IMG/VR virus record: IMGVR_UViG_3300042350_002797 | Location: 124,001-188,000 of that record | DNA: 64,000 bases | Direction: 5' to 3' (one strand) | Shown: positions 45,881-61,141 of the stretch, in pieces | How positions within the stretch are numbered: the stretch's first letter is position 1 | Layout of the letters: every line of letters begins with the position of its first letter | Program-made: the position numbers and the translations under genes | Notes under the pieces: generated by a model | The model's input: only the letters and a program-made list of their open reading frames with translations | The model's database searches: none | Told to the model about the DNA's origin: nothing

Positions 45881-45912
45881 ACTTGGACTGTGTTAACTTT
45901 CTTACTTACATT

Positions 45913-46236
45913 ATGAAGACTAAAACTATTGCTTTTTCTTTAATTTTTGCTGTTAACAGTGTGTGGGCCAATGCTTGGGATAATCCAAATACGCCATTTG
46001 ACACCAAAAGAAACTTTACTGAATCGTCTACTATTCGTTGGGTGACAGTGGATAATGTACAAGAAGCCTGTGAAAAAGAATCACGTAGCAGAGGCTATAA
46101 TGGTTTTGGTATGAGTGTGTTGGCTTGCTCTTTTTTCAAAGGAGATCAGTGTACAATCATTACTGGTAAGAAAACAACCATGCACACTTTAGGACATGAA
46201 GTTAGACACTGTTTTCAAGCAGATTGGCACAAATAA
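45913..46236 (+). CDS. Secreted small HExxH protein (minimal zincin-like)
   Basis: Signal peptide MKTKTIAFSLIFAVNSVWA; four Cys; TLGHEVRHCF. Confidence 0.7.
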   Translation: MKTKTIAFSLIFAVNSVWANAWDNPNTPFDTKRNFTESSTIRWVTVDNVQEACEKESRSRGYNGFGMSVLACSFFKGDQCTIITGKKTTMHTLGHEVRHCFQADWHK

Positions 46237-46260
46237 AAAAGCCCCTTGCGGGGCTTTTTT
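46235..46260. terminator. Bidirectional intrinsic terminator
   Basis: AAAAAAGCCCC-TTGC-GGGGCTTTTTT between convergent genes. Confidence 0.92.
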
Positions 46261-47098
46261 ATTGAATAGATTTTATATCTACCCCTTTTTGTTTAAGAAG
46301 TATAAGAGCTTGAGCCATTTCTCCACCTGAAAGATCTCCCTTCAGGCCTTGCATTAATGTTTCGCCTGTGTATTCTTGATATTGTTTAGATACACTTTGA
46401 TACTGTTTAGCATCTTTGATTGATTGTAAGACTTTAAATACTGCTTTATTATCTGTTCCGATTCCTTCTATGGCATTTTTTAATTGCCATGCGAGGGACT
46501 TATCTGTTTTCCAAAGTGCAGGTTCTGTCTTAGTTGCATTTGGATCTGTCTTGGTTGCATTTGGATCTGCCATAGGTGCTTGTCCGGATACAGGAAATCC
46601 GTGTTTTTTAGCAATATCTGGATATTTCTTCATAGCTTGTCTAGTTTTGCTATTTGGACCTCCAAGATTTCCGTCAATGCCGTCTTTGTTGGAACCATAA
46701 GTGCCTAAGTCTGCACCTGCTGCTTTTAGATCTTTCTGCATTTTCATAACTGCAAATTGATTTCCAGCGAGAGGTTTATCTCCACCTGTTTTGGTTTTTT
46801 CTCCAGGCATAGGCTGTCTTGGTACTTCCGGCATGCCTGGTTTATCAGATCCGGGAGTAACTGTTGAAGTAGAGTATTTGCTAATTTCATTACTAACACT
46901 GTTGTAACGATCTATTTCTCTATTTAGATCTTGAATGTTTGGGTAATTTGTATATCTTGAATCTTTGCCGAGGTCTTTAAGTTTCAAATATAATGTATTA
47001 AGTTCTGTTTGCTCAGCTGATGAAATTACTTCATATACTGGAGCGTCTATTCGATTTTCAATTTCTGACAATTTTGTCATTAAGTCTTTAATATTCAT
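46259..47098 (-). CDS. Putative internal virion protein: peptidoglycan-binding domain + annexin-like repeat
   Basis: VMKMQKDL..AG.DLG..G...DGIDG.LG...T..AM (PG_binding_1-like); LAWQLKNAIEGIGTD..AVF.VL...Q...+...Y...TG..L...LKGDLSG (annexin-like). Confidence 0.7.
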   Translation of the reverse strand: MNIKDLMTKLSEIENRIDAPVYEVISSAEQTELNTLYLKLKDLGKDSRYTNYPNIQDLNREIDRYNSVSNEISKYSTSTVTPGSDKPGMPEVPRQPMPGEKTKTGGDKPLAGNQFAVMKMQKDLKAAGADLGTYGSNKDGIDGNLGGPNSKTRQAMKKYPDIAKKHGFPVSGQAPMADPNATKTDPNATKTEPALWKTDKSLAWQLKNAIEGIGTDNKAVFKVLQSIKDAKQYQSVSKQYQEYTGETLMQGLKGDLSGGEMAQALILLKQKGVDIKSIQ

Positions 47099-47113: not shown

Positions 47114-48193
47114 TTATTTTCTTGCTGTTCCAGCATATTTCATAATCATAGCTGCATCGTCTGTGCCATAAGGATCAGTATATTCTGGTTCAGGCTCAGA
47201 CTTCTTAGGGTCTGGAACTATTTTTTGATCAGGCACTATTCGTTTTTTAGGATCAGGCTGAGGATTTTGACCACTTGGTTCCTTCATTAATGACTTATCT
47301 AACAGCTCTTTAAATCTAGCCACTGCTGTTTTAAGTTCCTCGGGAGTCATTAACGGATCCTCGCCTGCTGGCTGCTCTGCTTGCCCAGTTGGCTTTTCTG
47401 GCTCTGCTGGTTTTTCAGGAGTAGGTGCTGGAGTTGCTTCTGCACCTTTTTGTAATGCCATATAACGATCTACTAGAGTTTTGACATCAGGGCGTTGATC
47501 TTTCATCGGTCCTAGCTTGCTCATTACATCTGTAAGTTGCTTTTGTTCTTCAGGGCTTAAATCTTTTAATGCTTCAAAAACATAACCAAAAGATTCTACT
47601 AGTTTTCTAGAAATACTTTCGATAGTTACTGGTGCTGCATTTTTACCTTCTGCTTTGTCTAATAGTTTTATTGCAGTAGCAATGTCTTTAGCTAATTCGT
47701 CTTGCTCTTTCTTTCCTGGAGGAAGGTTTATACCTATATCTGTATTTTGACCTTGTGTAGGTTCAGGTTCTGGACTCTTTTGATCGACACCAGTGTAATT
47801 ACTGGTTTTCTTCTGGTCATCAGTTGGTAATGTATCCATTGTACCAGGTTCTTGTTTTTCTTGATTAAAAGTTTTCCATGTGACACCTTCTGGATAATCA
47901 ACAGGCTTGCCATTAACAAACTCTCCGTCGATACTAGTAGGATTAACAGCAGATCTGTCTTCAGGATCAAATTTAGCAAAGTTCCATTTAGCAATTTCTT
48001 GTCTACCTTGATTAGGATACTGCCCTTGTTTCATATGATAGAAATTTCCATCGCTGTGTAACATTAAGGATGTTCTTCCACCGAAGTTATTTTTATGAAA
48101 ATGTGTAGGTTTAAATTCTGTAGGTGCTGCTTCAGATAGTGTCGCACCACTTTCAATTTCTTGTAATTTTGTAATTAAGGATTGTAAGTCCAT
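47114..48193 (-). CDS. Putative internal virion protein, modular and P/E/K-rich
   Basis: N-terminus MDLQSLITKLQEIE parallels the neighbour's MNIKDLMTKLSEIE; LSE|A and VFE|A candidate cleavage sites. Confidence 0.6.
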   Translation of the reverse strand: MDLQSLITKLQEIESGATLSEAAPTEFKPTHFHKNNFGGRTSLMLHSDGNFYHMKQGQYPNQGRQEIAKWNFAKFDPEDRSAVNPTSIDGEFVNGKPVDYPEGVTWKTFNQEKQEPGTMDTLPTDDQKKTSNYTGVDQKSPEPEPTQGQNTDIGINLPPGKKEQDELAKDIATAIKLLDKAEGKNAAPVTIESISRKLVESFGYVFEALKDLSPEEQKQLTDVMSKLGPMKDQRPDVKTLVDRYMALQKGAEATPAPTPEKPAEPEKPTGQAEQPAGEDPLMTPEELKTAVARFKELLDKSLMKEPSGQNPQPDPKKRIVPDQKIVPDPKKSEPEPEYTDPYGTDDAAMIMKYAGTARK

Positions 48194-48296: not shown

Positions 48297-49061
48297 TTAT
48301 TTTGGAACACAGTTTGGAACTGTGCGTCCGTTCTTTTGTTTTGTTCCTACAGGCTTGTAACCTTTCCAACATGGATTATCTTTCGGATCTCTAAGACCTT
48401 CTTCAACTTCTTTACATCTACAGCCTTTTACATGGTCTCCAGGAATAGGACTTTTACTATCATTTGGAGGCGCTGTGTAATATTCTTCTAATTGTGATAT
48501 CTGTTCGTCTAGTTGATTTTTTAGTTGTCTAATATTGTCTAAAATATCTTCTACTTGTACAACAGGTTTACCTTGAGTATTTGAAGCTCTGCCTGTGCGG
48601 CTAGCTTTCATTTTATCTCCACTACCGCCAATGTGTTTACTAGCTAAACTTAGTCCTGCCTTACGAGGGCCTTTACTTGCTTTGCCCTGTTTAACTTCGC
48701 CACCTTTGGATAGATAATCTTTTACTGCGGAATCTACGTCAGCAGTTTTTTCGTTAATTTTTCTAGAGATTCTTTCTGCTAGTTGTTTGGCACGGTCTTT
48801 ATATCTTTCTTCTGATTCGGATATTTCGTCTTCTATTTTTTTAAAGTATTTTCCGATCATGCTTGGTTTAGCGTCTTTTTCTTTATTAAGAACCGGATTA
48901 GTAATATCTTTTTGATAGTGTTGAACAGCCATTAATTCTGCTGTACTTAGTCTGTTGTTTGATTCATTAACAATAGACAAAAACTTCTCCATATCTTTAG
49001 AAGAAGTTTTGTTAGGTGCCGACGCTCCATCTACAGCAGCTAAGAATTTTTTCATATCCAT
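48297..49061 (-). CDS. Putative internal virion polyprotein
   Basis: Modules separated by VNE|S, INE|K, VEE|G; C-terminal PCWKGYK.VG.K.K.G+.VPNCVP module. Confidence 0.6.
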   Translation of the reverse strand: MDMKKFLAAVDGASAPNKTSSKDMEKFLSIVNESNNRLSTAELMAVQHYQKDITNPVLNKEKDAKPSMIGKYFKKIEDEISESEERYKDRAKQLAERISRKINEKTADVDSAVKDYLSKGGEVKQGKASKGPRKAGLSLASKHIGGSGDKMKASRTGRASNTQGKPVVQVEDILDNIRQLKNQLDEQISQLEEYYTAPPNDSKSPIPGDHVKGCRCKEVEEGLRDPKDNPCWKGYKPVGTKQKNGRTVPNCVPK

Positions 49062-49064
49062 AAT

Positions 49065-50090
49065 TTATTTCTTAGCCGTTTTAGCTGCATCCTTCCAATC
49101 TTTAGCATTAGGTGCTTTAGGATGATTTTTGTCTCTACTAGTTCCTGCTGCTTTACGTTTGTTTACATTATAGTAAAGGCCTTTCTTAACTGCTTCTTCC
49201 ATAGGACACTCTTTTAAACCATGTACTGGACAGCTCTTGCCCTCCATAGTTTGATTACACCCTTTTGACATTTCGTTTGTTTTCTTACGATAAACATCTA
49301 CAGGGCCATGCTTACTACCTTTTTTAGGTAGATGTACTTCGTCGGGAGGTGATGGTAATTTGTCACCACCTTCTTTTATTTTCTTGTCTTTAAGAGCCTT
49401 TTTCATTGGCTCTTTTTTGTTACCATCTTTGTCGAAGTCAAGATAATCTGGCTTAGACGATTCTTTAACTTTTTTATCCTTCTTCGGCTTTTCATCTTCC
49501 TCGTCCTCTTTATCTGCTGCTTGTTTACTACCGCCATAGCGGGATCCTTTTTTAATTCCACTACCGCCACTAGGTTGAGGGCCTCGTTTTTTCTCAAGAT
49601 ACTTTTGCATCTCTTCAAAGCCTTCTTTGACATCCTTTTCTTTGTCATCGTCTTTCTGTTTGCTGCCACCGTATGCCTTGCCTTGCTTTTTTCCAGCACC
49701 GCCGCTTGGCTTCGGTTTATCTTTTTCTTTCATATACTTTTCTAAGTCGTCAAATCCTTCTTCGACTTTGTCAGTTTGTTTTTTAACTTTTTCAGCTTGA
49801 CGCTTTGCTTCCATTAATTTTTGTTGAAATGCAAGACGTACACTTTCACTGTAGACATCGCTGTTTTCTAATTTATCGCCATATTCGCTAGCTTTCATTT
49901 CATATTCCATAAAATGGTATACACTAGCAATATAATCAGCTGCTTTAGTAATCTTAGCCTGCACCCAACCTTCTAGTTCTTGACCTTCTCGGATCATTTT
50001 AAATAATTTCATAGAATAGTTGGCTAATTTGTATAGATCAGCACGGGCCATTGCAGCTTCGTGATTATCTGGACGTCTATCTAAATTCAT
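49065..50090 (-). CDS. Putative internal virion polyprotein, K/E-rich
   Basis: LEGWVQAKITKAADY domain; duplicated GF..+.KY.....P.PSGG.G.K.G..YGGSKQ modules after VEE|G and VKE|G; PDYLDFDKDG; CPVHG; GLYYNVNKR modules. Confidence 0.65.
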   Translation of the reverse strand: MNLDRRPDNHEAAMARADLYKLANYSMKLFKMIREGQELEGWVQAKITKAADYIASVYHFMEYEMKASEYGDKLENSDVYSESVRLAFQQKLMEAKRQAEKVKKQTDKVEEGFDDLEKYMKEKDKPKPSGGAGKKQGKAYGGSKQKDDDKEKDVKEGFEEMQKYLEKKRGPQPSGGSGIKKGSRYGGSKQAADKEDEEDEKPKKDKKVKESSKPDYLDFDKDGNKKEPMKKALKDKKIKEGGDKLPSPPDEVHLPKKGSKHGPVDVYRKKTNEMSKGCNQTMEGKSCPVHGLKECPMEEAVKKGLYYNVNKRKAAGTSRDKNHPKAPNAKDWKDAAKTAKK

Positions 50091-50111: not shown

Positions 50112-50118
50112 TATTTAT
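50112..50118 (-). promoter_or_regulatory. Late-promoter-like ATAAATA
   Basis: CGATAAATAT about 22 nt before GGAG-ATG(50090); identical CGATAAATAT at 56943-56952. Confidence 0.55.
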
Positions 50119-50372
50119 CGTTTGACGGCACCACCGCCGAATATGTTATTTTTTATATCTAATGCATTCTTAGCAGTACCGTCTGGGTTCTTAACTTGAA
50201 CAGTTTTGGGAACACTAGGTGCCTTAGTTCCAGATTTACCCGGAGTTCCTGTGTAGCTTTTTTTGCCTCGGTCTTTACCTATAGCAACATGGGGACTGAC
50301 CACTGAAGCAATATTACCGGCACTAGTAGCACCAGCAGTGGCAGTTTCTCCTAATAGTTCCCTTAAACGCAT
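50115..50372 (-). CDS. Small putative internal virion protein
   Basis: Leader MRLRELLGE followed by a basic G/K/T-rich peptide. Confidence 0.6.
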   Translation of the reverse strand: MRLRELLGETATAGATSAGNIASVVSPHVAIGKDRGKKSYTGTPGKSGTKAPSVPKTVQVKNPDGTAKNALDIKNNIFGGGAVKR

Positions 50373-50374
50373 GA

Positions 50375-51010
50375 TTAGCCCTCAAATGCATCTAATGCAT
50401 CATTCCAATGTTTAATACGATCTTCCATGCCAATCGTGCCACCGTTGATTCTTTTACTTAATAAGACAATGTCACCTTTGTCGCAAATTGCATTTAGTTG
50501 ATTCTTATACCAGAACCAGCAAGCACTAAGGGTCGCATATTCTGGAGTTCTTAGTAAGTCCGGATCATTTGCTAATGTATCGTCGCCGAATAAATCTCGA
50601 CTGCATTTAGTATAATTGTCACGTCCAGTTAATTGTAGAATACCTCTACCGCGGAATTTCCAACCATCTCCGCTAGATTCAGGCCCATTGCCCATACGAC
50701 TACTATAGATTTTGTTAGCGATCTTTTCAGGTTTACGCTCATAGGCTTTTGCTGTAGCATCGTCCGGAAAGTATTTTCCAAATAATCCACGAAGCCCTTT
50801 AGCTCCGTAGTTTAAATTTTCTTGTAGTGCAGTAAAATCGGCACTTTCGTGTTGACATTGTGCAATAAATCCTGCTACTCTAGCAGGTGTAGTAATCATA
50901 AATTTTGGTAAGTACATATTAAACGCATTATACCAAAGCTCTAATTCTTTGTTTTTATGTACTACTTTTTTAAGATTGTTTAATGTAAAATCAAATTCAA
51001 ATCCACTCAT
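50375..51010 (-). CDS. Glycoside hydrolase family 19 endolysin
   Basis: R.A.F+AQC.HES, ENLNY, GDGWKFRGRG..QLTGR.NY, SACWFW, RINGG..G..DR. Confidence 0.93.
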   Translation of the reverse strand: MSGFEFDFTLNNLKKVVHKNKELELWYNAFNMYLPKFMITTPARVAGFIAQCQHESADFTALQENLNYGAKGLRGLFGKYFPDDATAKAYERKPEKIANKIYSSRMGNGPESSGDGWKFRGRGILQLTGRDNYTKCSRDLFGDDTLANDPDLLRTPEYATLSACWFWYKNQLNAICDKGDIVLLSKRINGGTIGMEDRIKHWNDALDAFEG

Positions 51011-52830
51011 TTGCTACTCCTTTTTTTACCTTGCCTCATATTTATTTGCCAATGGGCTAATTGTTTTTTACGAGGACTTGCTGTGTCACTGCTTCTAATT
51101 TTTTTTAGTGTTGAGATACTGGATTTTTTTGGAATCCCGTGTCTTGCACTATCGCCTTTATCTTGAGGATTTTTACCATCTGCAAAATTTTCATCAATAT
51201 CGTGTGTATCTAATCCTAGTTGTTTAAGATATTTGATATATTCGTGTTCCAGAGGTTCACTGCCAAATGATAATACAGTTTGAGGAGGTCCTTGACCGAA
51301 ATCGTGTTTACCTAACCCTTTTAAATTACTAATATGCTGACCTAATTTATACCAGTCATATGTGTCACTAACATCTACTTTTACAGTGCCTTTAGGCCAT
51401 GGAATTAAATCTCCTTCTTTAATAGGAGTATTCATAGTTTTTAGGTAATTTTGAAATATTCCGTGACGTTTTTGTAAACCAGCTAGTCCAGGATTAATAT
51501 ACCTAGTTACAGTTCTTGTATCAGTAAAGTTTTTAACATTAGGCTGGACTCTATTTTTCCAGAACCACACACTGGCTTTGGCAGCGATTTCTGGTTTTTC
51601 TAATAATTCGGGTTTGTTATCCAAAGGAAGACCTAGTGCTTGACCGGCTTGAGTATAATTCCATCGACCTGTTAATTGAATAAACCCGCGACCTTTAAAT
51701 CTTTGTCCGTCTCCAGACATAGTATTACCTAACTCTTTGGCCTTATCAGGACTAAATTGTTTATCGTATTTTTTTAAAAATTCGTCAGATGTACCAAATT
51801 CTACAAGTGTTGCATAATTTGCTGTTTCGTGTGCGCACTGTGCTAAAAATTGTGCAAGCTCTTTGCCTTTGATGCCTGCCTTTAAAGCAAAATTTCTTAG
51901 CGTAGATTCTAAAGGATTGCCAGTTATTGGAGCAGGTTGAGCTGCCTGACCTGATATTTTTTTGTCTACAGAAGTAGGTTGTTTTTTCTTTTGTATATTA
52001 GAAATTAAATCACCAATTGGGTCGCCTTTAACATTACCATATGAATCTAATTTTTCTTTAATAGATTCAGCTTCTCCGCCACCATCTCCGCTGTATCCAC
52101 TGTCGTATCCATAACCACCGTAAGGTCCAGGACCCCATGCTCCATAACCGCCATAAGTATTTCTACTAAAAAGTGAATTTTGTTTTCGTTGACGAGATTT
52201 TTTCTTTCTACGGCTTTCGCTTACTACAGCAACACTACCAGAAGATTTTACAAAATATGCATCAAAATCTACATTAGGGTATTCTTGTTCTAAACTTTTG
52301 AATACTTTTAAATTTGTCATCGAATCATCAATAAGATTCACTCTGTTATACTTGCCGGTATTTAGATACTTTCTTACCCATACGGCTTTTTTATAAGCCG
52401 GCGGTTCGTCACCAGGTAAATTGCCTGCACGATGAACATGTATACGACTCATATCAATACCATACTTTTCAAACGTACTTAAAAATTTATCTTTATCATC
52501 AAAGTCGGCACGAGCAGTTAACATAATTACTTTGGTATTAGCTGCCCGGTCTAGGATACGTTTTAATGTGTTGATCATTGGTTTAATTGGTTCGCTTTCT
52601 TTAGCAAACTTTTCAGCACTACGAAACTCGCCGAAGTCAAATTCTTCACCAGGTTGTAATTCGTAATTATTAAATTCTTGATTAGTTAAACTACGTACTA
52701 CTTTACCGTCTTTGATTACTTTAATCTGAGCAGTAGTATGAAATAATGTATCATCAATGTCGAAGATTGTTAAGCCCATATTACCCTTAGGCATTTCTTG
52801 TCGTTCGGTAATAATATCTAATATTTTCAT
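51007..52830 (-). CDS. Multidomain protein: HAD-family phosphatase + GH19 lysozyme + small modules
   Basis: FDIDDTL, LTAR, IDD (HAD); AQFLAQCAHET, GDG.RFKGRG.IQLTGR.NY (GH19); domain borders at VSE|S, IKE|K, IKE|G, IDE|N. Confidence 0.85.
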   Translation of the reverse strand: MKILDIITERQEMPKGNMGLTIFDIDDTLFHTTAQIKVIKDGKVVRSLTNQEFNNYELQPGEEFDFGEFRSAEKFAKESEPIKPMINTLKRILDRAANTKVIMLTARADFDDKDKFLSTFEKYGIDMSRIHVHRAGNLPGDEPPAYKKAVWVRKYLNTGKYNRVNLIDDSMTNLKVFKSLEQEYPNVDFDAYFVKSSGSVAVVSESRRKKKSRQRKQNSLFSRNTYGGYGAWGPGPYGGYGYDSGYSGDGGGEAESIKEKLDSYGNVKGDPIGDLISNIQKKKQPTSVDKKISGQAAQPAPITGNPLESTLRNFALKAGIKGKELAQFLAQCAHETANYATLVEFGTSDEFLKKYDKQFSPDKAKELGNTMSGDGQRFKGRGFIQLTGRWNYTQAGQALGLPLDNKPELLEKPEIAAKASVWFWKNRVQPNVKNFTDTRTVTRYINPGLAGLQKRHGIFQNYLKTMNTPIKEGDLIPWPKGTVKVDVSDTYDWYKLGQHISNLKGLGKHDFGQGPPQTVLSFGSEPLEHEYIKYLKQLGLDTHDIDENFADGKNPQDKGDSARHGIPKKSSISTLKKIRSSDTASPRKKQLAHWQINMRQGKKRSSK

Positions 52831-53468
52831 TTCACCAGTCCAGCTAATTGTTTTATTCTATGTAAATCTTTTACAGTCTCGGCTACTCGAGGTTTTATAG
52901 TAGGTGCCGCTGCTACCGGTGGTTTAGTTGTAGATGCCACGGGTGCCGGCACAGCAGCGGGTGCCTGTGCTACTGCCTGAGGTGCAGCAGGTGTGCCTTT
53001 AAATTTTGCCATTGCTATATCAACTTCTTGTTTTATAGTATTGGTAATATTACCTACCAAAGTATTAAGTCTTTGTTTAGTGCCTTGCGGATCAGCAACT
53101 AAATCTTGTTCTAAGGTTACTAGTTCTCCTTTAGGACCTGCAAATGCTTCTGCATATAGTTCTCGAGCCATGGCATACGCTGTGGCAGGAATAGTAGTAA
53201 CAAACGAGCCAAATGTACTAGCTACATCTAATCCTGCTCCTACAATATCGCCACCAGTAATACTTTGCCCACTGTTCCATATGGCTTTTAATTTATCATA
53301 GGCACCTTTTAATGCAACTACAGTGCCTACAACTGGAATACTTTTAGCAACTATACTAGCTATTTTTGAACCTATTTTTTGTTTGACTATACCGGCTAGA
53401 GCTGTGCTTGCGAGTTTAGGCACTCGCTGTACAGCAGTATTTTCATGAATAATTTGGTAATCAGTCAT
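52827..53468 (-). CDS. Putative virion protein with hydrophobic helical hairpin
   Basis: Likely start ATG 53468; KSIPVVGTVVAL...GDIVGAGLDVAS; C-terminal LHRIKQLAGL. Confidence 0.6.
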   Translation of the reverse strand: MTDYQIIHENTAVQRVPKLASTALAGIVKQKIGSKIASIVAKSIPVVGTVVALKGAYDKLKAIWNSGQSITGGDIVGAGLDVASTFGSFVTTIPATAYAMARELYAEAFAGPKGELVTLEQDLVADPQGTKQRLNTLVGNITNTIKQEVDIAMAKFKGTPAAPQAVAQAPAAVPAPVASTTKPPVAAAPTIKPRVAETVKDLHRIKQLAGLVK

Positions 53469-53685
53469 TTTTCCTAATACCTGATCCAATAGGTTTTTCA
53501 CCGGTAAGTTTGGGCAAGCTAAACCACAGTTGAAACCATTCAGGAGTTCCTGGTTTAATATTATGCTTCTTCATAAGACGACCTTTTTCGTCGCCAGTAA
53601 TACTGATATTGCTCCCCTCCCAGACATGCCATCCTTTATATTCATTTATACCAGCAAGTTTTTTAATTTGATCTAATTCATCCAT
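53461..53685 (-). CDS. Small putative virion protein
   Basis: MDELDQIKKLAGINE leader; IKPGTPEWFQLWFS. Confidence 0.65.
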   Translation of the reverse strand: MDELDQIKKLAGINEYKGWHVWEGSNISITGDEKGRLMKKHNIKPGTPEWFQLWFSLPKLTGEKPIGSGIRKND

Positions 53686-54118
53686 TTTTTAAACTTGCCC
53701 TTAACATCCACCCATGTTTACGATGTGCATCTATTCTGCCTGCTACAAAATCACTAAATCCATATTCTCCATTTTTTTCAGATTCTTGAAATACTAATTT
53801 GAGAACTTTAATAATTTTTTCGTTGTCTTCTAATAATTCTTGTAACATTGATTCGGGCGGAAGAATATTAGTTTCGTCGTCGATTTGTGTTAGCATACTA
53901 AATCGTTGAAAACTACCTGGAACATATGTGCCTTGACTACGAATTTGTTCTGCAAATACGTCTATACTACCATATACTTCTTCATAGATAGCACCAAAAA
54001 GATCATGTAATTCTTTAAAATGAATGCCTTCGACGTTCCAATGAAAGTTGTGTGCTTTTAAATAGAAACTAAAAGTACTGGCAAATGCTACTTTACTGGC
54101 TTTTTGTAATTCTTCCAT
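53678..54118 (-). CDS. dps: Dps / DNA-binding ferritin-like protein
   Basis: KAHNFHWNVEG..F..LH.LF..IYE.....D..AE.IR, H.K..WML. Confidence 0.93.
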   Translation of the reverse strand: MEELQKASKVAFASTFSFYLKAHNFHWNVEGIHFKELHDLFGAIYEEVYGSIDVFAEQIRSQGTYVPGSFQRFSMLTQIDDETNILPPESMLQELLEDNEKIIKVLKLVFQESEKNGEYGFSDFVAGRIDAHRKHGWMLRASLKNG

Positions 54119-55176: not shown

Positions 55177-56925
55177 TTACCATGCTCTGCAAGACCAGTA
55201 CCGTGCTTTCCACCGTGGACCAGGATTAGCACAATTGTGTCTAGCTCTAAAACTTTTACGACGTTTTGGATTAGACTTTTTAATAGTCATTTTTTTGTCA
55301 CCAAAATTCACTTTAACTACTTTGCCGTTAGGTTTTTTAACATATACTTTAGATTTTTTAACATCTCCAGCCATACGTTTGCCTAGAGGAACTTTACGTC
55401 CTTGATATTCTGCTTCTGTTAAATCATCATGGAATGTACAACCATGAGCTTCTAATAATTTAAGTGTAGTTGCATCTGCTTCGATCAATACTGATTCTGT
55501 CCATTCAGCTATGACCCAAGTTTCAATGCCTTCATCCTCTGCTAATTCGATATGAAAATAATCTCCAGAACTCAACGGTCCTTCATTTTCAATCGCTTCA
55601 ATATGTTCTAAAAGACTTTTATTAGAAAGTCTTGATTCTTTAAATGAACTAGGACCTCCTGTTTGAGGATCAGGTAATTCTCTTTTGTATTGTAGTAGAG
55701 CAGCCATTTCTGGAGTATTAGGCTGTGCTTTAAATACCCAAGGGTTTAATTTGTGCATAAGTTTAAAGGCAACATCGCCATTTAACCACATAGCTTGACC
55801 TTGAGGAAGTGCTATGGCTTGGGCTATAGATTCCCAACCACTCATAGGACTATCATCCTTAGGTACTCCATCGCCTTTATAGGCTGCACCAGATTGTCCT
55901 CTTACATCGCTTACTAATTTAGCAAAAGGATGCGTCTGTGTATCCAAAGTTCCAATATTGTCAGGATCGTACCAACTTCCGCCTTGCTCGCCACTGGCTG
56001 CTTGTTTAAGAAAACCTTGCATTCTATCTAATTGTTTTTGATAAATCTGTGCAGCCTGTGTCTTACCTTGTTTGGTAAGGTTATCAATAGTAGCTTTATA
56101 TTTTGCAATTCCTGCCTCATAAGATTTTATATCTTGTTGAACCTCTTCAGGGCTACTGCCTTGAGCACCTATACCTGAAGATACTTGACTTACATCCTTA
56201 TATTCAGCTTTAAGCTGTGCGGCTGTGGGTAGCAAAAGTTTAAATTTGGTTTGAGCTGCTGGTGCTGCTGGTGCTGCTGGTGCTGCTGGTGCTGCTGGTG
56301 TCGGAGCAGCGTTAGGTCCTACTCCTGGAGTAGGACCTTCATTTAGTATATCTAAATATTTTCTTAATGACATTTTATTAGATTCCTTCATTAACACACC
56401 TAGCTCTTGTTGCGATGGTTTTCTACCAACGAAACTTTGTTTATCTGGTTCTTGTCTTTTATCTTCTGGATCGGGACCAGTTACGCTATAAATTTTGTTA
56501 CCACCTTGTTCAACATCCTTGCCTGCACCGCCAAATCCTATACCTTGATCCATCGAAACAGTATTAGCACCAACAGAAGTACTAGCACTAGTAACTGTGC
56601 TCTGATCTGGACGCTGTTTAGTAGACATTTTAATGTCGCCTACCTGCACATCTGTATTAACAAGGCCGGTTTGAAGATCAATCTCTTTTCCAAATCCGCC
56701 TAGATTAGGAGTGGCATATTTTATTGCCTTGCCGGATTTATCATATGTAAATTTGCCAAATGCTCCAGCATATGATCTTGTACCATCGGGATTAGAATAG
56801 ACTTTTGCGCCTTCATCTTCTCCGTCTGTTGGAGGAAGAGCAGGAATTGGAGGTACTTTGACTTGATTAGATTGTTGTTCGTTTAAAATATCTAGATAAT
56901 TTCTAAGTATAGACCCTGAAGTCAT
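55177..56925 (-). CDS. Putative internal virion polyprotein
   Basis: LR.YLDILNE| occurs twice; LTE|AEYQG then a basic C-terminal VNFGD...RRKSFRARHNC...ARYWSC module. Confidence 0.65.
   Translation of the reverse strand: MTSGSILRNYLDILNEQQSNQVKVPPIPALPPTDGEDEGAKVYSNPDGTRSYAGAFGKFTYDKSGKAIKYATPNLGGFGKEIDLQTGLVNTDVQVGDIKMSTKQRPDQSTVTSASTSVGANTVSMDQGIGFGGAGKDVEQGGNKIYSVTGPDPEDKRQEPDKQSFVGRKPSQQELGVLMKESNKMSLRKYLDILNEGPTPGVGPNAAPTPAAPAAPAAPAAPAAQTKFKLLLPTAAQLKAEYKDVSQVSSGIGAQGSSPEEVQQDIKSYEAGIAKYKATIDNLTKQGKTQAAQIYQKQLDRMQGFLKQAASGEQGGSWYDPDNIGTLDTQTHPFAKLVSDVRGQSGAAYKGDGVPKDDSPMSGWESIAQAIALPQGQAMWLNGDVAFKLMHKLNPWVFKAQPNTPEMAALLQYKRELPDPQTGGPSSFKESRLSNKSLLEHIEAIENEGPLSSGDYFHIELAEDEGIETWVIAEWTESVLIEADATTLKLLEAHGCTFHDDLTEAEYQGRKVPLGKRMAGDVKKSKVYVKKPNGKVVKVNFGDKKMTIKKSNPKRRKSFRARHNCANPGPRWKARYWSCRAW
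56255..56299. repeat. 9-bp tandem repeat x5 (Pro-Ala-Ala linker)
   Basis: (GCTGCTGGT)5 on the + strand. Confidence 0.95.
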
Positions 56926-56977: not shown

Positions 56978-57610
56978 TTAAGCTCTAACTACATTCTCTA
57001 CTTTTGTAATTGTACGCCCTAAAAACATCTTAACCATAGTGAGATTTTTGTCATCTTTGACGTAAAAATACCCCCCGCCAGGGCTATAATCCTTACATAA
57101 ATCCTTAGCAGCACGTTTTGGTAGTCTGATTTTGTTATTGTTTTTACACCATTCTACAAAGCTTATGTAATTTTGAGTAGTTGCTCCTAATGTAACTTTA
57201 AAAGCATAATCTAAGTTTTTAACCAGCACAGTGCCTTCTGTTAATTTGCTTTCGGTTTTAGGATCAGGTATTTCTACATATTTTATTTTATTCTTACAGT
57301 TTTTGACTACTATTTCTAGATCTGTTTCTGTATCAACATAGATAGTAACGAACGGAGTTTCTACTCTTGCTTGCCAGTTTTCAATTGATTCAAGAACTTT
57401 ACTTAATTTGTTGGCATGATTTTTCTCTCCTGCTGTGGCTTGCCTTGAATAGTAATATTGATCGCTGTTTTCATACATATGTTGGATCTTAATTGCGTCA
57501 GATCCGCGAAACCAGCCAGCTACTCCAGAAGTAAACACTACTTTAAATTTGTATTTGTTCTGGAATAGCTTAGTACTATACTTTACATTATGCGATTTCA
57601 AGAATTTCAT
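56978..57610 (-). CDS. Hypothetical protein
   Basis: 210 aa, last gene of the dnaJ-def-clpA unit. Confidence 0.65.
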   Translation of the reverse strand: MKFLKSHNVKYSTKLFQNKYKFKVVFTSGVAGWFRGSDAIKIQHMYENSDQYYYSRQATAGEKNHANKLSKVLESIENWQARVETPFVTIYVDTETDLEIVVKNCKNKIKYVEIPDPKTESKLTEGTVLVKNLDYAFKVTLGATTQNYISFVEWCKNNNKIRLPKRAAKDLCKDYSPGGGYFYVKDDKNLTMVKMFLGRTITKVENVVRA

Positions 57611-59840
57611 GTTCTAATACTGATTGTTTAGCTTTAGATTTAAATGTAAGTTGATCATTTTCTACAGCTATAGTGAGCACTCCACTGTTTTTTAAGTCTC
57701 CGAATAATAGCATTTTAGACAATGGTCGTTTAATTTCTTTATCAATAACACGTTGTAGAGGTCTTGCACCCATCTTCTTATCAAATCCTCGTTCGATTAA
57801 CCAATTTATAGCATCTTTATTAATCTTAAGTTTAACACCTTTTTCTCTGACTTTTTCACGTACCTCATCGATAAATTTAGTTACAATTTTACCCATAACT
57901 TCTTTTGAAAGTTTGTTAAATGTAACGATCCCGTCTAATCTATTACGGAATTCTGGAGCAAAGAATTTTTTAAGTTCTTTATCTTCGTAAGTCTTTTCTT
58001 GACTGCCGAATCCAATAACATTTTTTTCTGCTTCTTGAGCTCCGGCATTAGTGGTAAGAATCAGCACTAAATTTCTACAATCTGCACGTTTACCATTACT
58101 ACCTGTGACGAATCCATTGTCCATGATTTGTAATAAAATTGTACTTACATCTGGATGACTCTTTTCAATTTCATCCAATAATAAAACACAATTAGGATTT
58201 TCTTGAATCTGAGTAATTAGCAATCCAGCATTTTCTTCAAATCCAACATAGCCTGGAGGACTGCCGATAAGTTTACTAATACTGTGTTTTTCTTGATATT
58301 CACTCATATCAAATCGAACAAGTTTTACACCTAAGTGTTTAGATAATGCTTTGGCTGTTTCAGTTTTTCCACAACCAGTCGGCCCCATAAACACAAAGCT
58401 ACCTATTGGCTTGTCATCGGATTTCAGTCCAGCTCGGCTTACAAGAATTTTATCTACAATATCTGTAATAGCAGTATCTTGTCCGTATACATCTTCTTTA
58501 ATTTTACTTTCTAAGTTAGCAAGATTATTAGTTTCGCTTTCTGCAATTGTTTCTGTAGGTATGTTAATCATCTTGCTAAGTTCAAACTCGATCTCAGTAG
58601 CAGTAATAGTTCTACTATCAGCTAATTTTAAATTAAACCGACTAGCCGCACAATCAATAAGATCGATAGCTTTATCAGGCAATTTTTTATCTGCTTGATA
58701 TTTTACACTTAGTTTGATTGCTGCTTGTATGGCGTCGTCTTTAATTTTAACATTATGATGTTGTTCATAATATTTTTTAATACCTTTAAGTATCTGTACA
58801 GTCATTTCTGATGTAGGTTCATCTACACTAATTCTTTGGAATCTACGCATCAATGCACGATCTTTTTCAAAATACTTACGATATTCTTCCCATGTTGTAC
58901 TGGCCACTACCTTTATATTGCCTTTACTCAATGCCGGCTTCATCATGTTACTCAAATCGTTAGCATTGTTATTTGCAGATCCTGCACCACTTACCATGTG
59001 TGCTTCGTCAATAAACAGAATAGTTTTGCCTTTCTTTTCTAAACTTTTCAGTACTGCCTTGAACCTTTCTTCAAAATCGCCTCGGTATTTACTGCCTGCT
59101 AACATAGCACTAATATCGAGATTGTATACAGTATATTTTTTTAGAAATTCTGGTACAGCACCTTTTACTATATTATAGGCAAGGCCTTCTGCTATAGCAG
59201 TTTTGCCTACTCCAGGATCTCCTACCAATAATACATTACTTTTTGTTCTGCGACCCAAACAAAGTGCTACATTTTCAAGTTCTTCTATTCTACCAATTAC
59301 TGGATCTATTTTATTCTTTTTAACTTCGTCGTTTAAATTAACAGTAAATGCTCTAAGAGCACGATCATTGTGATGTGACTCCACACCGGCTTCCTCTTCA
59401 ATTTCAACTACTTCATTATTCAAATAATCACTAAATTTATCTTTATCAATACCTGCTTGCTGTATATAATAAAAGGCATAACTTCTTTTTTCAGACATCA
59501 TGGCTAAAAACACATCTGCAGATTCAATTTTTTGTCTGCCGTTAAACAACACCTGTGTGAAAGATTTATTTAGAATACGTTCAACTGCTTGTGTTTTTCT
59601 AGGTTTTACATCCTGCTGCTCGGATACTATGTTTTGACATTTATTTTTTAAATAGTGCTCGAGATTTTTCTTTAGAAATTCAGGATCTGCTCCGTAGCCA
59701 GTTAAACAATTTGAAAAATTTTCCTCGCATAGCATAGCGAATAGCAAATGCTCTATGGTCAAATAATCGTGTTTTAATTGTGTAGCTACTTTGATTGATT
59801 TTTCAAATACTAGTTGAAGTTCGTTGCTTGGTTCTACCAT
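57588..59840 (-). CDS. clpA: ATP-dependent Clp protease ATP-binding subunit ClpA
   Basis: Clp-N EHLL; GDPGVGKT / FIDEAH; GPTGCGKT / LLDEIEK; IGF ClpP-docking loop; GARPL; no ClpB middle domain. Confidence 0.95.
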   Translation of the reverse strand: MVEPSNELQLVFEKSIKVATQLKHDYLTIEHLLFAMLCEENFSNCLTGYGADPEFLKKNLEHYLKNKCQNIVSEQQDVKPRKTQAVERILNKSFTQVLFNGRQKIESADVFLAMMSEKRSYAFYYIQQAGIDKDKFSDYLNNEVVEIEEEAGVESHHNDRALRAFTVNLNDEVKKNKIDPVIGRIEELENVALCLGRRTKSNVLLVGDPGVGKTAIAEGLAYNIVKGAVPEFLKKYTVYNLDISAMLAGSKYRGDFEERFKAVLKSLEKKGKTILFIDEAHMVSGAGSANNNANDLSNMMKPALSKGNIKVVASTTWEEYRKYFEKDRALMRRFQRISVDEPTSEMTVQILKGIKKYYEQHHNVKIKDDAIQAAIKLSVKYQADKKLPDKAIDLIDCAASRFNLKLADSRTITATEIEFELSKMINIPTETIAESETNNLANLESKIKEDVYGQDTAITDIVDKILVSRAGLKSDDKPIGSFVFMGPTGCGKTETAKALSKHLGVKLVRFDMSEYQEKHSISKLIGSPPGYVGFEENAGLLITQIQENPNCVLLLDEIEKSHPDVSTILLQIMDNGFVTGSNGKRADCRNLVLILTTNAGAQEAEKNVIGFGSQEKTYEDKELKKFFAPEFRNRLDGIVTFNKLSKEVMGKIVTKFIDEVREKVREKGVKLKINKDAINWLIERGFDKKMGARPLQRVIDKEIKRPLSKMLLFGDLKNSGVLTIAVENDQLTFKSKAKQSVLEHEILEIA

Positions 59841-60336
59841 TATATTTCCTTTGTTTTTTTAAAGCTAAATCTAATTTTAACCTACTAATGCGATCAATAA
59901 AGCAAATACCATCTAAATGATCTAATTCGTGCATGAAGCATCTAGCGTCAATGCCTGTTAGTTCTATTATATGCTGATTATTATCTCTGTCAAGAAACTC
60001 GACTAGAATAATTTTAGGTCGAGAAACTTTAAAAAATAATCCAGGAAAACTTAAACATCCTTCCTCTTCCAATTCAACTTCTTGGCTGACTTTTATTATT
60101 TTAGGATTAAAAACAGCAAAAGGCGTGTTCACATCTTTTATATTATGAGGATACATTACAAATACTCTGGCATTTACACCTACCTGATTAGCACTTAACC
60201 CTATGCCATTTTCTTCAGCCATAAGTGTAACCATAGATTCTTCTAGTATTAAGGGATCTATAATAGGATTAGAAAAATCAAAATCGTCTAATCTTTTATC
60301 TAAAATTTCATTAGGATAGTGAATTAAGTTGAGCAT
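59803..60336 (-). CDS. def: Peptide deformylase
   Basis: GIGLSANQ, EGCLS, HELDH. Confidence 0.95.
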   Translation of the reverse strand: MLNLIHYPNEILDKRLDDFDFSNPIIDPLILEESMVTLMAEENGIGLSANQVGVNARVFVMYPHNIKDVNTPFAVFNPKIIKVSQEVELEEEGCLSFPGLFFKVSRPKIILVEFLDRDNNQHIIELTGIDARCFMHELDHLDGICFIDRISRLKLDLALKKQRKYNGRTKQRTSTSI

Positions 60337-61141
60337 TTATATTTTCAATTTGTTTCAAGATTGTTTGATCATTTATTGTAGGAGTTATTACTTCTACAAC
60401 TACAATTAAATTGCCTGACCTGCCAGAAGAAAGATTAGTGAAGCCTCTTCCTTTACTGCTAAATTCAGTTCCAGAATTTACACCAGCTCGTATTTTTATT
60501 GGCATAACAGTTCCATCCAAACATTTGATTTCTTTAGTACATCCTAAAATTGCTTCGAATGAGTTTATTTGTATAATTTTACACAAGTCATCATTCCGAC
60601 GCATCCATTCTGGATCATTTTCTACCATGATCTGTACATTTAGATCGCCAGGAGGAAAATTACTGTAACTATCGTCACCCAGGCTAGGATGTCTGATAGT
60701 TTGTCCGGATTGTATACCAGCAGGTATATCTATAGTAACTTCTTTATTTTTTCCTGAAGGAGTTCTGTATTTTGCTATCATTTGAGCTCCTAGATAACTT
60801 TGTTTGAATGTAACATTCATTCTTATAGTTAGATCTCTATTTCTAGGAGCTCGTTGTTGAGCAAAGCCGTGTCCGAAATGAAATCCAAAAATATCTTCGA
60901 AGTTTGGAAAACCAGACCCTGATCTAATGTTTATAAAAGGATTCGTACCGTTTAATTCGGCATCATATTGTGATCGTTTATTAGGATCACTAAGTGTATC
61001 ATATGCTTGAGATATTTCTTGGAATTTTTTATTATCGCCACCACGGTCAGGATGATGTTTCATGGCCAATTTTTTATAGGCCTTTTTTATATCATCCTGA
61101 CTGGCTTTTTCATTTACTCCGAGTATTTCATAATAGTTCAT
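60311..61141 (-). CDS. DnaJ-class chaperone (CbpA-like, no Zn finger)
   Basis: YYEILGV...HPD J-domain; C-terminal DnaJ domains (IPAG, GDL, GRG). Confidence 0.93.
   Translation of the reverse strand: MNYYEILGVNEKASQDDIKKAYKKLAMKHHPDRGGDNKKFQEISQAYDTLSDPNKRSQYDAELNGTNPFINIRSGSGFPNFEDIFGFHFGHGFAQQRAPRNRDLTIRMNVTFKQSYLGAQMIAKYRTPSGKNKEVTIDIPAGIQSGQTIRHPSLGDDSYSNFPPGDLNVQIMVENDPEWMRRNDDLCKIIQINSFEAILGCTKEIKCLDGTVMPIKIRAGVNSGTEFSSKGRGFTNLSSGRSGNLIVVVEVITPTINDQTILKQIENINAQLNSLS

What the first reader, a model, noticed from the sequence alone, without database searches (positions are those of the whole stretch)
46320..46750. Phage annexin-like domain fused to a peptidoglycan-binding domain
Seen: LAWQLKNAIEGIGTDNKAVFKVLQSIKDAKQYQSVSKQYQEYTGETLMQGLKGDLSG follows the annexin repeat pattern (A..L..A+.G.GTD...+..+L......Q...+...Y...G..L...+K.+.SG), including the GxGT loop and the distal acidic residue of the type II Ca2+ site. 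It follows a PG_binding_1-like domain and a DPNATKT x2 linker. Established: annexins bind anionic phospholipids in a Ca2+-dependent way and are mostly eukaryotic, with scattered bacterial single-domain forms. Inference: an ejected protein bridging cell wall and inner membrane, or resealing the membrane, during DNA entry.
Basis: partly seen in the sequence, partly recalled or inferred. Interest (0 to 1): 0.68.

Follow-up and report, generated by a model that had tools for sequence, protein, structure and literature searches.

The report
Phage annexin repeat fused to wall-binding module
A giant lake-water phage encodes a small late protein that joins a peptidoglycan-binding module to one genuine annexin (calcium/phospholipid-binding) repeat, which looks built to tie the host cell wall to a membrane and is probably carried in the virion.

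Summary
The ORF at window 46259-47098 (minus strand, 279 aa) ends in a single annexin repeat. It scores 32.7 bits on Pfam PF00191 (cut-off 25). An AlphaFold model superposes on solved annexins at 1.6-1.7 A over 71 residues. The GxGTD loop and the distal Asp are invariant in all 17 family members.

The middle domain misses the Pfam PG_binding_1 model. A profile of it hits only PG_binding_1-type proteins in the PDB (best E 1.5e-7). The same module sits on SLT and M23 wall hydrolases in related phages.

The host genome is a 364-kb T4-superfamily jumbo phage from lake metagenomes. The gene closes a four-gene operon that starts at a late-promoter-like ATAAATA, lies just downstream of a GH19 lysin gene, and ends at a strong terminator.

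The N-terminus resembles the T4 capsid-targeting peptide and carries an L-x-E prohead-protease site. The genome encodes a gp21-type protease.

Best reading: a late, probably virion-delivered, Ca2+-switched tether between peptidoglycan and anionic membrane. The domain identities are solid. Delivery route and function are inferred. A 2014 survey found no annexins in viruses. Here they occur in about four rare phage architectures.

The parts
46259..47098 (-). Gene for the 279-aa annexin/wall-binding protein (P0001)
   Evidence: ORF list and translation. 16 homologues at 48-98% identity, all from metagenomes. Synteny is conserved in a 58%-identical relative.
47057..47098 (-). N-terminal amphipathic peptide (residues 1-14, MNIKDLMTKLSEIE) with an L-S-E site; candidate capsid-targeting/propeptide signal
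   Evidence: Seen in the sequence. The neighbour P0002 starts the same way. The motif is kept internally where the two ORFs are fused in L005/L008/L010. T4 CTS and the gp21 L/I-x-E specificity come from PMC8442874 and PMC9026906. The function is inferred.
46874..47098 (-). Acidic helical N-terminal region (residues 1-75, pI about 4.8)
   Evidence: Three helices in the AF2 model at low confidence; pI.
46802..46834 (-). Nearly invariant Pro-rich motif MPEVPRQPMPG (residues 89-99) between the N-region and the wall-binding module
   Evidence: Alignment A1. The role is unknown.
46595..46762 (-). PG_binding_1-superfamily cell-wall-binding module (residues 113-168)
   Evidence: Profile A3 against the PDB: 4nso_A at E 1.5e-7, and all 9 hits are PG-binding proteins. 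AF2 pLDDT 88. Top 7 VIA-align hits are PG_binding_1 proteins. The same module is fused to SLT and M23 domains in related phages. There is no direct Pfam hit.
46526..46567 (-). DPNATKT x2 tandem linker (residues 178-191)
   Evidence: Sequence. Linker length and sequence vary among homologues. The model is disordered here.
46289..46504 (-). Single annexin repeat, five helices (residues 199-270)
   Evidence: Pfam 32.7 bits, above the cut-off of 25. PDB profile hits. AF2 pLDDT about 76-83 with five helices. Foldseek: 71 aa at 1.6-1.7 A and 27-35% identity to annexins XII, III, V, IV and A2.
46451..46465 (-). G212-I-G-T-D216, the AB-loop of the type II Ca2+ site
   Evidence: Invariant in all 17 family members, including two module types only about 33% identical. 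Also invariant in three other phage architectures.
46334..46336 (-). D255, the distal acidic cap of the Ca2+ site
   Evidence: Invariant. Aligned to the annexin cap Glu/Asp by HMMER.
46232..46263 (-). A-tract/GC-hairpin/T-tract intrinsic terminator right after the stop codon, shared with the convergent + strand ORF
   Evidence: Sequence. Fold -20 kcal/mol, z -5.0. The simple consensus scan did not list it.
47114..48193 (-). Upstream operon gene P0002 (359 aa, unknown function), 15 nt from the annexin gene; fused to it in other phages
   Evidence: No family match.
48297..49061 (-). Operon gene P0003 (254 aa, basic, C-terminal Cys motif)
   Evidence: phrog_9737 (unknown function) at E 3e-9.
49065..50090 (-). 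First operon gene (341 aa, Lys-rich, pI 9.3)
50112..50118 (-). ATAAATA late-promoter-like motif, 21 nt before the 341-aa gene
   Evidence: The motif is 31-fold enriched upstream of genes (24 of 150 versus 0.77 expected) and sits 15-33 nt before about 45 start codons, including the large structural ORFs. In the window there are only 12 copies against 43 expected.
50375..51010 (-). GH19 lysin gene (211 aa, probable endolysin) immediately upstream of the operon, with its own ATAAATA at 51039-51045
   Evidence: Pfam Glyco_hydro_19 at 32.6 bits.

Best explanation
P0001 is a late protein of a freshwater T4-superfamily jumbo phage, built as a two-headed tether. One head is a PG_binding_1-type module, the same one these phages put on their SLT and M23 wall hydrolases; it binds peptidoglycan. 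The other head is a single annexin repeat with an intact type II Ca2+ site. It should bind anionic phospholipid (phosphatidylglycerol or cardiolipin) only where free Ca2+ is high, that is in the periplasm and not in the cytoplasm where the protein is made. The two heads are joined by a flexible repeat linker.

The protein has no secretion signal, so it must reach the periplasm by a phage route. The favoured route is packaging into the prohead through the N-terminal T4-CTS-like peptide, trimming by the gp21-type protease at L-S-E, and ejection at infection. There it would pin the wall to the membrane at the entry site, to stabilise or seal it.

Shown: gene, domains, fold prediction, conservation of the Ca2+ ligands, late-type operon structure, presence of the protease, recurrence of the motif. 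Inferred: lipid, Ca2+ and wall binding; packaging; cleavage; ejection; the physiological effect.
For: Annexin identity.

Ca2+-site residues G212, G214, T215, D216 and D255 are invariant, although the annexin module exists as two types only 31-38% identical on an N-terminal/wall-binding chassis that is up to 84-93% identical (e.g. P0009; wall-binding part 78-93% across type B).

Wall-binding module: plus a weak language-model lead.

Independent re-invention of the pairing: 299-aa phage proteins (L053-55) combine a hydrophobic segment, an annexin-like domain and the same YGxxxDGIDG wall-binding module in the opposite order. L048/51/52 combine a Gly-rich hydrophobic segment with an annexin-like domain.

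Late class: ATAAATA motif statistics and its position before the operon, the terminator, and a perfect sigma-70 promoter starting the next unit, dsbA-like plus DNA polymerase.

Packaging hypothesis:
- gp21-type protease and gp23 are present in the genome.
- The MCP starts with a 14-aa peptide ending Y-L-A-E.
- Seven ORFs start M-x3-[EDQ]-h-h-x-E against 0.39 expected (a motif defined post hoc).
- Carriers include a GH19 protein and a PG_binding_1 + Hydrolase_2 protein.
- An Fe/Mn SOD carries a 17-aa N-terminal extension of this type.
- T4 IPIII/IPII start MKTYQEFIAE and follow the endolysin gene e, as this operon follows GH19.
- The motif is kept internally in fused P0002-P0001 ORFs.
Against: There is no virion proteome, no expression timing and no binding data; the phage is uncultured.

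P0001's own N-terminus is a longer variant of the motif and does not match the strict pattern that was enriched. L/I-x-E is a very weak motif.

In T4, CTS cargo travels with the DNA into the cytoplasm, not obviously into the periplasm.

A single annexin repeat has never been shown to bind membranes. A homodimer prediction gave no answer.

The Pfam PG_binding_1 model does not match P0001. The predicted module lacks the usual third helix.
Confidence: 0.45

Rival explanations
1. Lysis-phase accessory. The protein accumulates in the cytoplasm late in infection, is released into the periplasm through holin lesions together with the GH19 endolysin, and is switched on by periplasmic Ca2+. It then ties wall fragments to a membrane. 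This could help envelope disruption in a spanin-like way, or concentrate lysis factors at the wall-membrane interface.
For: The operon lies directly downstream of the probable GH19 endolysin gene, and both carry late-type motifs. The wall-binding module is the one used by KZ144-like SLT and M23 lysins. A protein without a signal peptide is typical of holin-dependent factors.
Against: No holin or spanin features were seen in the operon, and no TM segment or lipobox in P0001-P0003. This reading does not explain the conserved N-terminal peptide, its retention inside fused ORFs, or its sharing with unrelated proteins such as SOD. T4 also places packaged IP genes next to e, so position does not discriminate.
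Confidence: 0.25
2. The annexin repeat is not a lipid binder here. It could serve as a Ca2+-sensing or protein-binding helical module. One example would be a head-internal or scaffold-associated structural protein whose wall-binding-like module has also been co-opted.
For: There is only one repeat, whereas canonical membrane-binding cores have four. The annexin module is swapped between two very divergent types, as expected for an interaction surface under an arms race. The N-terminal region and P0002 are uncharacterised.
Against: The residues conserved across 31-38% identical modules and across four architectures are exactly the Ca2+ ligands. The recurrent partners are hydrophobic segments and wall-binding modules, that is envelope features.
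Confidence: 0.15
3. Cytoplasmic action. The annexin repeat docks on the inner leaflet of the cytoplasmic membrane, and the wall-binding module captures peptidoglycan precursors (lipid II or muropeptides). This would interfere with wall synthesis or recycling late in infection.
For: There is no export signal. Anionic lipids are present on the inner leaflet (general knowledge).
Against: Bacterial cytoplasmic free Ca2+ is sub-micromolar (general knowledge), which is poor for a type II annexin site. PG_binding_1 modules are known from extracytoplasmic enzymes. Nothing in the data points to this reading.
Confidence: 0.07

Closest known systems
Eukaryotic annexins (e.g. annexin A3, A4, A5, XII; Pfam PF00191)
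   Same: A roughly 70-residue five-helix repeat, with the GxGT AB-loop plus a distal acidic cap forming the type II Ca2+ site. Identity to individual repeats is 27-35% in structural alignments, and 48% over 56 aa to rat annexin A3 repeat 1.
   Different: It has one repeat instead of a four-repeat core. There is a one-residue insertion between loop and cap. It is fused to a wall-binding module and an N-terminal pro-region. It is encoded by a phage.
Bacterial annexins (Kodavali et al. 2014, PMC3894181)
   Same: Single- or few-repeat annexin domains are combined with unrelated domains. The distribution is patchy, mostly in aquatic organisms.
   Different: That survey reported metalloprotease/toxin-type partners and TM regions, no peptidoglycan-binding partner, and no annexins in viruses. 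My pattern scan of 185,579 species genomes found no close relative of this domain.
Modular phage lysins of the KZ144 / AP3 type (PG_binding_1 + catalytic domain)
   Same: The same wall-binding module. Relatives at 46-69% identity sit N-terminal to SLT or M23 domains. phiKZ gp144 and the AP3 endolysin are among the top structural matches.
   Different: P0001 has no catalytic domain; an annexin repeat occupies that position.
T4 internal proteins IPI-III and Alt (CTS-targeted, gp21-processed, ejected)
   Same: A short amphipathic N-terminal peptide ending in L/I-x-E. A gp21-type protease in the genome. Late genes placed just downstream of the endolysin gene. Hypervariable, modular cargo.
   Different: There is no sequence homology to any IP. 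Packaging is unproven. Known T4 IPs act in the cytoplasm (anti-restriction, ADP-ribosylation), not on the envelope.
Wall-membrane tethers and envelope-spanning ejection proteins (Pal/OmpA/Lpp type; T7 gp14-16)
   Same: The proposed job is the same: physically linking peptidoglycan to a membrane, or bridging the periplasm at DNA entry.
   Different: Those proteins use lipid anchors, beta-barrels or TM helices. This one would use a reversible Ca2+-dependent peripheral anchor. There is no homology.
Annexin-domain genes next to extracellular contractile injection systems (PMC8213781)
   Same: Annexin PF00191 is listed among domains encoded beside phage-tail-like injection machines and predicted to be delivered cargo.
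   Different: Those were proposed as anti-eukaryotic effectors of bacteria. Here the carrier would be a true phage and the target a bacterium.

Membership tests
Annexin (PF00191) | Sequence match to the curated repeat model above its gathering score | tested here: met
   32.7 bits for the whole protein and 35.8 bits for the domain alone, against a cut-off of 25. 35.6 bits in the six-frame genome search.
Annexin (PF00191) | Five-helix annexin repeat fold | tested here: met
   The AF2 model has five helices at residues 199-270 with pLDDT 76-83. Foldseek aligns 71 aa at 1.6-1.7 A rmsd to many annexins with probability 1.00. This is a prediction, not an experimental structure.
Annexin (PF00191) | Type II Ca2+ site: GxGT loop plus an acidic residue about 38 positions downstream | tested here: met
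   G212-x-G214-T215 and D255 are invariant in 17 sequences. D255 aligns with the cap residue. The spacing is 39 rather than 38.
Annexin (PF00191) | Four-repeat core of canonical annexins | tested here: not met
   There is one Pfam match only. The protein resembles single-domain bacterial forms. Self-association was tested once without an answer.
Annexin (PF00191) | Ca2+-dependent binding of anionic phospholipid | not testable with these tools
   Needs a liposome co-sedimentation assay with and without Ca2+.
PG_binding_1 (PF01471) superfamily | Match to the curated Pfam model | tested here: not met
   P0001 gives no hit at E<=10. Close relatives of the module score 13.7-17.5 bits, below the cut-off of 23.
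PG_binding_1 (PF01471) superfamily | Profile-level homology to solved PG_binding_1 domains | tested here: met
   Profile A3 hits 4nso_A at E 1.5e-7. It also hits an L,D-transpeptidase, SleB, SltB2/B3, 1lbu and the AP3 endolysin. All 9 hits are of this kind.
PG_binding_1 (PF01471) superfamily | Three-helix PG-binding fold | tested here: inconclusive
   The model (pLDDT 88) shows helix 1, a long DG-rich loop and two short helices. Foldseek is not significant. The top 7 VIA-align hits are all PG_binding_1 proteins, but Z is only 2.9-4.6.
PG_binding_1 (PF01471) superfamily | Occurs attached to peptidoglycan-hydrolase catalytic domains | tested here: met
   The module is fused to SLT (46 bits) and Peptidase_M23 (75-96 bits) in related phage contigs.
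T4-type CTS-targeted internal/ejected proteins | N-terminal targeting peptide ending in a gp21 L/I-x-E site | tested here: inconclusive
   Residues 9-12 are K-L-S-E within an amphipathic peptide that P0002 shares and that fused ORFs keep internally. P0001 does not match the strict enriched pattern, which has 7 ORFs against 0.39 expected.
T4-type CTS-targeted internal/ejected proteins | gp21-family prohead protease and gp23-type capsid in the same genome | tested here: met
   Peptidase_S77 at 87.7 bits and Gp23 at 331.7 bits.
T4-type CTS-targeted internal/ejected proteins | Presence in the mature head, N-terminal trimming, and ejection into the host | not testable with these tools
   The phage is uncultured. 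This needs virion mass spectrometry on a cultured relative or on lake virome metaproteomes.

The most novel reading that the evidence does not exclude
Tailed phages have recruited annexin repeats as injected, calcium-switched envelope tools. The repeat is paired with a peptidoglycan-binding module in at least two independent domain orders. Such a protein would patch or clamp the host membrane to the wall at the DNA-entry wound, a bacterial-virus counterpart of annexin-mediated membrane repair. These would be the first viral annexins, and the first evidence that a single annexin repeat is a functional lipid-binding unit.
Probability: 0.2. Interest if true: 0.85.

Novelty: new variant of a known kind. 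Interest (0 to 1): 0.62.

Why it matters
Annexins are textbook eukaryotic membrane-repair and trafficking proteins. Their prokaryotic history is obscure, and a dedicated 2014 survey found none in viruses.

This work shows a well-conserved, clearly functional-looking single annexin repeat in abundant lake phages. It is welded to a cell-wall-binding module and exchanged as a cassette. That gives three things:
- A tractable single-repeat model for annexin Ca2+/lipid chemistry.
- A possible vehicle for the patchy spread of annexins among aquatic bacteria.
- A candidate new kind of phage envelope effector that exploits the Ca2+ gradient across the cytoplasmic membrane as an on-switch.

The accompanying N-terminal tag family also suggests a large, unexplored set of packaged cargo proteins (lysins, SOD) in non-model T4-superfamily jumbo phages.

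Tried and rejected
- PHROGs gave nothing for P0001.
- megablast and tblastn of the region and the protein against 50,697 GenBank phages found no match.
- The genome contigs pattern scan found no relative. It is a pattern scan, so it is not proof of absence.
- Foldseek with the isolated wall-binding model was not significant. VIA-align was used instead.
- Complex prediction on two copies of the annexin domain returned 'no answer' (score 0.01). This is not evidence either way.
- A loose N-terminal [hydrophobic][hydrophobic]xE count was not enriched (20 against 15 expected). Only the stricter, post-hoc pattern was.
- TATAAATA, the exact T4 late box, is not the promoter here: 16 copies in the genome with inconsistent placement. 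The 7-mer ATAAATA is the recurrent upstream motif.
- The genomic context of the other annexin-like phage genes was uninformative. L054 has IMPDH and glycosyltransferases. L051 lies about 2 kb from a major head protein gene.
- The Atlas search gave nothing for P0002.
- The exhaustive 1.84-billion-protein HMMER search was not run. The operators flagged its cost, Pfam had already placed the domain, and multi-repeat eukaryotic annexins would fill the 150 listed rows.
- Rat annexin A3 clusters surfaced in the word search. They were used only to name the hit and as two rows in a comparison alignment.

Full report
WHAT IS THERE

The finding lies in one ORF on the minus strand, window 46259-47098, 279 aa (P0001). 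The quoted peptide is residues 202-258 (window 46325-46495). The DPNATKT x2 linker is residues 178-191.

The window is bases 124001-188000 of a 364,554-bp IMG/VR virus record that CheckV rates complete. Its family-B DNA polymerase is 45-49% identical to those of Sinorhizobium phage Phosso, Agrobacterium phage Atu_ph07 and the roughly 350-kb Escherichia jumbo phages. The genome also encodes a T4-type major capsid protein and a gp21-type prohead protease. It is therefore an uncultured jumbo phage of the T4 superfamily.

The gene's DNA is present at 94% or more of sampled words in 17 lake-water metagenome runs.

THE ANNEXIN REPEAT IS REAL

- Pfam Annexin scores 32.7 bits (cut-off 25; E 7.8e-8) on residues 203-258.
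- It is the only such match in the genome, and 14 control genomes give none.
- A profile of the 17-member family hits about 60 annexin chains in the PDB and nothing else for this part of the protein.
- The AlphaFold model is poor overall (pLDDT 58) because of the linkers. Residues 199-270 form five helices at pLDDT 76-83.
- Foldseek places those residues on annexins XII, III, V, IV and A2 over 71 residues at 1.6-1.7 A and 27-35% identity.
- G212, G214, T215, D216 and D255 are invariant. HMMER aligns D255 with the acidic cap of the type II Ca2+ site, with one extra residue between loop and cap.

The family contains two annexin module types that are only 31-38% identical. They sit on an N-terminal/wall-binding chassis that is up to 84-93% identical (e.g. 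P0009; the wall-binding part is 78-93% identical across type B). The module has been exchanged as a cassette, yet the Ca2+ ligands never change. That is the strongest sequence-level argument that the Ca2+ site is used.

THE MIDDLE DOMAIN IS A WALL-BINDING MODULE

Pfam PG_binding_1 does not match P0001, even at E<=10. Scanning IMG/VR with the family alignment returned many phage proteins that share only residues about 113-168, at 54-78% identity over the matched segment.

Most of these are proteins of about 233 aa whose C-terminal halves are SLT lytic transglycosylases. Others are M23 peptidases. These relatives give sub-threshold PG_binding_1 hits (E 0.005-0.07).

A 23-sequence profile of the module hits nine PDB sequences. 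All are peptidoglycan-binding or wall-hydrolase proteins:
- 4nso_A, 'Effector protein', at E 1.5e-7
- an L,D-transpeptidase
- the SleB N-domain
- SltB2/B3
- 1lbu
- the AP3 phage endolysin
- a C. difficile PG-binding protein

The isolated domain folds at pLDDT 88. Foldseek is not significant for so small a domain. In an all-against-48,161-chain VIA-align search, the seven best chains all carry PG_binding_1 domains, including phiKZ gp144 and the AP3 endolysin (1.5 A over 38 residues, 40% identity). Z is only 2.9-4.6.

I therefore file the module in the PG_binding_1 superfamily as a divergent, shortened form. Binding itself is untested.

THE PAIRING RECURS

Searching IMG/VR with the annexin part alone found three further phage protein families with annexin-like domains:
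- L049/50 (490 aa): Pfam Annexin 27.4 bits.
- L048/51/52 (279-300 aa): a Gly-rich hydrophobic segment followed by an annexin-like domain, 19 bits.
- L053-55 (299 aa): a hydrophobic segment, an annexin-like domain (15.6 bits), and then the same YGxxxDGIDG wall-binding module at the C-terminus. This is the same two domains in the opposite order.

GxGTD, a Tyr, a Leu and the cap Asp are invariant across all of them and two rat annexin A3 repeats.

The domain is rare. A degenerate GxGTD-context pattern matched only 37 stretches in 2.9 million viral contigs, and 11 of them were relatives. GenBank phages contain no detectable relative. A 2014 survey stated that no annexins were found in viruses. Full-text searches found no report of a phage annexin.

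GENOMIC SETTING

The gene is the last of four co-oriented genes: 341 aa, P0003, P0002, P0001. It is separated from P0002 by 15 nt.

Directly after its stop codon lies an A-tract/GC-hairpin/T-tract terminator (-20 kcal/mol, z -5.0). The next unit (dsbA-like gene, DNA polymerase) starts from a perfect TTGACA-17-TATAAT promoter.

The 7-mer ATAAATA, which is the T4 late box minus its first T, behaves as follows:
- It is 31-fold enriched upstream of genes (24 of 150 against 0.77 expected).
- It lies 15-33 nt before about 45 start codons, including the large tail-fibre-like ORFs.
- It is otherwise avoided: 12 copies in the window against 43 expected.

One copy lies 21 nt before the 341-aa gene (50112-50118). 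Another lies before the 211-aa GH19 lysin gene just upstream. The operon thus looks late, and it follows a probable endolysin gene. This order is conserved in a 58%-identical relative.

RNA-library contigs identical to parts of the gene exist in two aquatic metatranscriptomes. As contigs, they do not prove transcription.

HOW WOULD IT REACH THE WALL?

P0001 has no signal peptide or hydrophobic segment. Its first 14 residues form an amphipathic peptide containing L-S-E. P0002 starts almost identically. In three independent contig groups the P0002-like and P0001-like ORFs are fused into one ORF of 563-580 aa that keeps this peptide internally.

Many proteins here and in the related loci begin with a similar tag:
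- the SLT and M23 lysins
- the 607-aa GH19 protein
- a PG_binding_1 + Hydrolase_2 protein
- a 636-aa protein that carries the same wall-binding module

Seven ORFs of this genome match M-x3-[EDQ]-h-h-x-E against 0.39 expected. That pattern was defined after looking at the data.

An Fe/Mn superoxide dismutase carries a 17-residue N-terminal extension of this type ahead of the canonical domain start. The capsid protein itself starts with a 14-residue peptide ending Y-L-A-E.

In T4, the first 10 residues of IPIII/IPII (MKTYQEFIAE) are the capsid-targeting sequence. They are removed by gp21, which cuts after L/I-x-E. ipIII and ipII lie directly downstream of the endolysin gene e.

These parallels make virion packaging and ejection the best available route. 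None of it is demonstrated, and P0001's own tag is a longer variant of the enriched pattern.

MECHANISM PROPOSED

The protein is made late in a low-Ca2+ cytoplasm, where the annexin site is idle. Once in the periplasm it meets millimolar-range Ca2+. It gets there either by ejection (favoured, about 0.45) or by holin-dependent release with the endolysin (about 0.25). The annexin repeat then binds phosphatidylglycerol- or cardiolipin-rich membrane while the other head holds peptidoglycan. The flexible, length-variable linker spans the gap.

Whether the result is anchoring of the entry channel, sealing of the wound or help in lysis cannot be decided here.

A separate lead is that annexin-domain genes have been noted beside phage-tail-like injection systems.

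VERDICT

The domain interpretation is confirmed, with the caveat that the wall-binding module is a divergent family member. The functional inference is plausible and somewhat strengthened, but unproven.

I rate it a new variant of known kinds: annexin repeat, PG_binding_1 module, and possibly CTS cargo. It has real novelty as the first documented phage annexins and a recurrent annexin plus wall-binding architecture.

Noticed in passing
G000 284529-285083 (locus L064), outside the window: An Fe/Mn superoxide dismutase carries a 17-residue N-terminal extension (MMSYEFIKGFIAE...) resembling the T4 capsid-targeting sequence. It sits ahead of the canonical Sod_Fe_N start. This could be a packaged SOD.
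   Followed up: partly
window 50115-50372 (-), compared with G000 82397-83485 (L068): The N-terminus of an 85-aa ORF (MRLRELLGE then TATAGATSAGNIASV) mimics the capsid protein's propeptide junction (..YLAE then SATGGATSAGNVATL), matching at about 12 of 14 positions. It may be a decoy or competitor for the prohead protease or for the capsid N-arm.
   Followed up: no
window 52827-53501 (-); G000 291845-292849 and 292860-294770 (L058, L057); annexin homologues P0009, P0010, P0012, P0014, P0017-19: A recurrent C-terminal tag of the form E-[LI]-D-R-I-K-x-L-S-G-[LI]-(K) ends several unrelated proteins. A similar string occurs internally in L012 just before L-N-E. It may be a second targeting or processing signal, recalling the two-ended processing of T4 Alt.
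   Followed up: no
L005, L008, L010 (IMG/VR contigs): The P0002-like and annexin-protein ORFs are fused into one ORF of 563-580 aa, with the N-terminal tag retained at the junction. This is a Rosetta-stone link between the two neighbours.
   Followed up: partly
window 46802-46834 (-): The motif MPEVPRQPMPG between the N-terminal region and the wall-binding module is nearly invariant across the family, although it lies in a predicted disordered stretch. It could be a cleavage or docking site.
   Followed up: no
window 51007-52830 (-) and 50375-51010 (-): There are two tandem GH19 genes. One encodes a 607-aa protein with the N-terminal tag, a DxDxT (HAD-like) motif and a GH19 domain. The other encodes a 211-aa GH19 protein without the tag. 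The relative L063 has LysM + GH19 in place of the first.
   Followed up: partly
whole window and genome: ATAAATA is strongly avoided: 12 copies in the window against 43 expected. Most copies sit 15-33 nt before start codons. It is probably the late promoter box of this phage lineage, with the first T of the T4 box not required.
   Followed up: yes
window 45883-46236 (+): A convergent 117-aa ORF has a signal-peptide-like N-terminus and an HExxH motif (HEVRH). It shares the terminator with the annexin gene. An ORF of similar size and orientation is present in L063.
   Followed up: no
window 48297-49061, 49065-50090, 55177-56925 (-): Basic, low-complexity proteins carry Cys-containing C-terminal motifs. 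For example, P0003's CWKGYKPVG...NCVP matches several PHROGs of unknown function. The 582-aa ORF carries the LRxYLDILNE tag twice.
   Followed up: no
window 53678-54118, 57588-59840, 60311-61141 (-): The phage encodes a ferritin/Dps-like protein, a ClpB-like double AAA+ chaperone (750 aa), and an ORF starting like a DnaJ J-domain.
   Followed up: no
G000 337216-338613 (L056): A 465-aa protein combines the MRFNEFKNLITE tag, a GDSL-like region, a canonical PG_binding_1 (37 bits) and Hydrolase_2 (25.8 bits, just under its cut-off). It is a further tagged wall-active enzyme in the same genome.
   Followed up: partly
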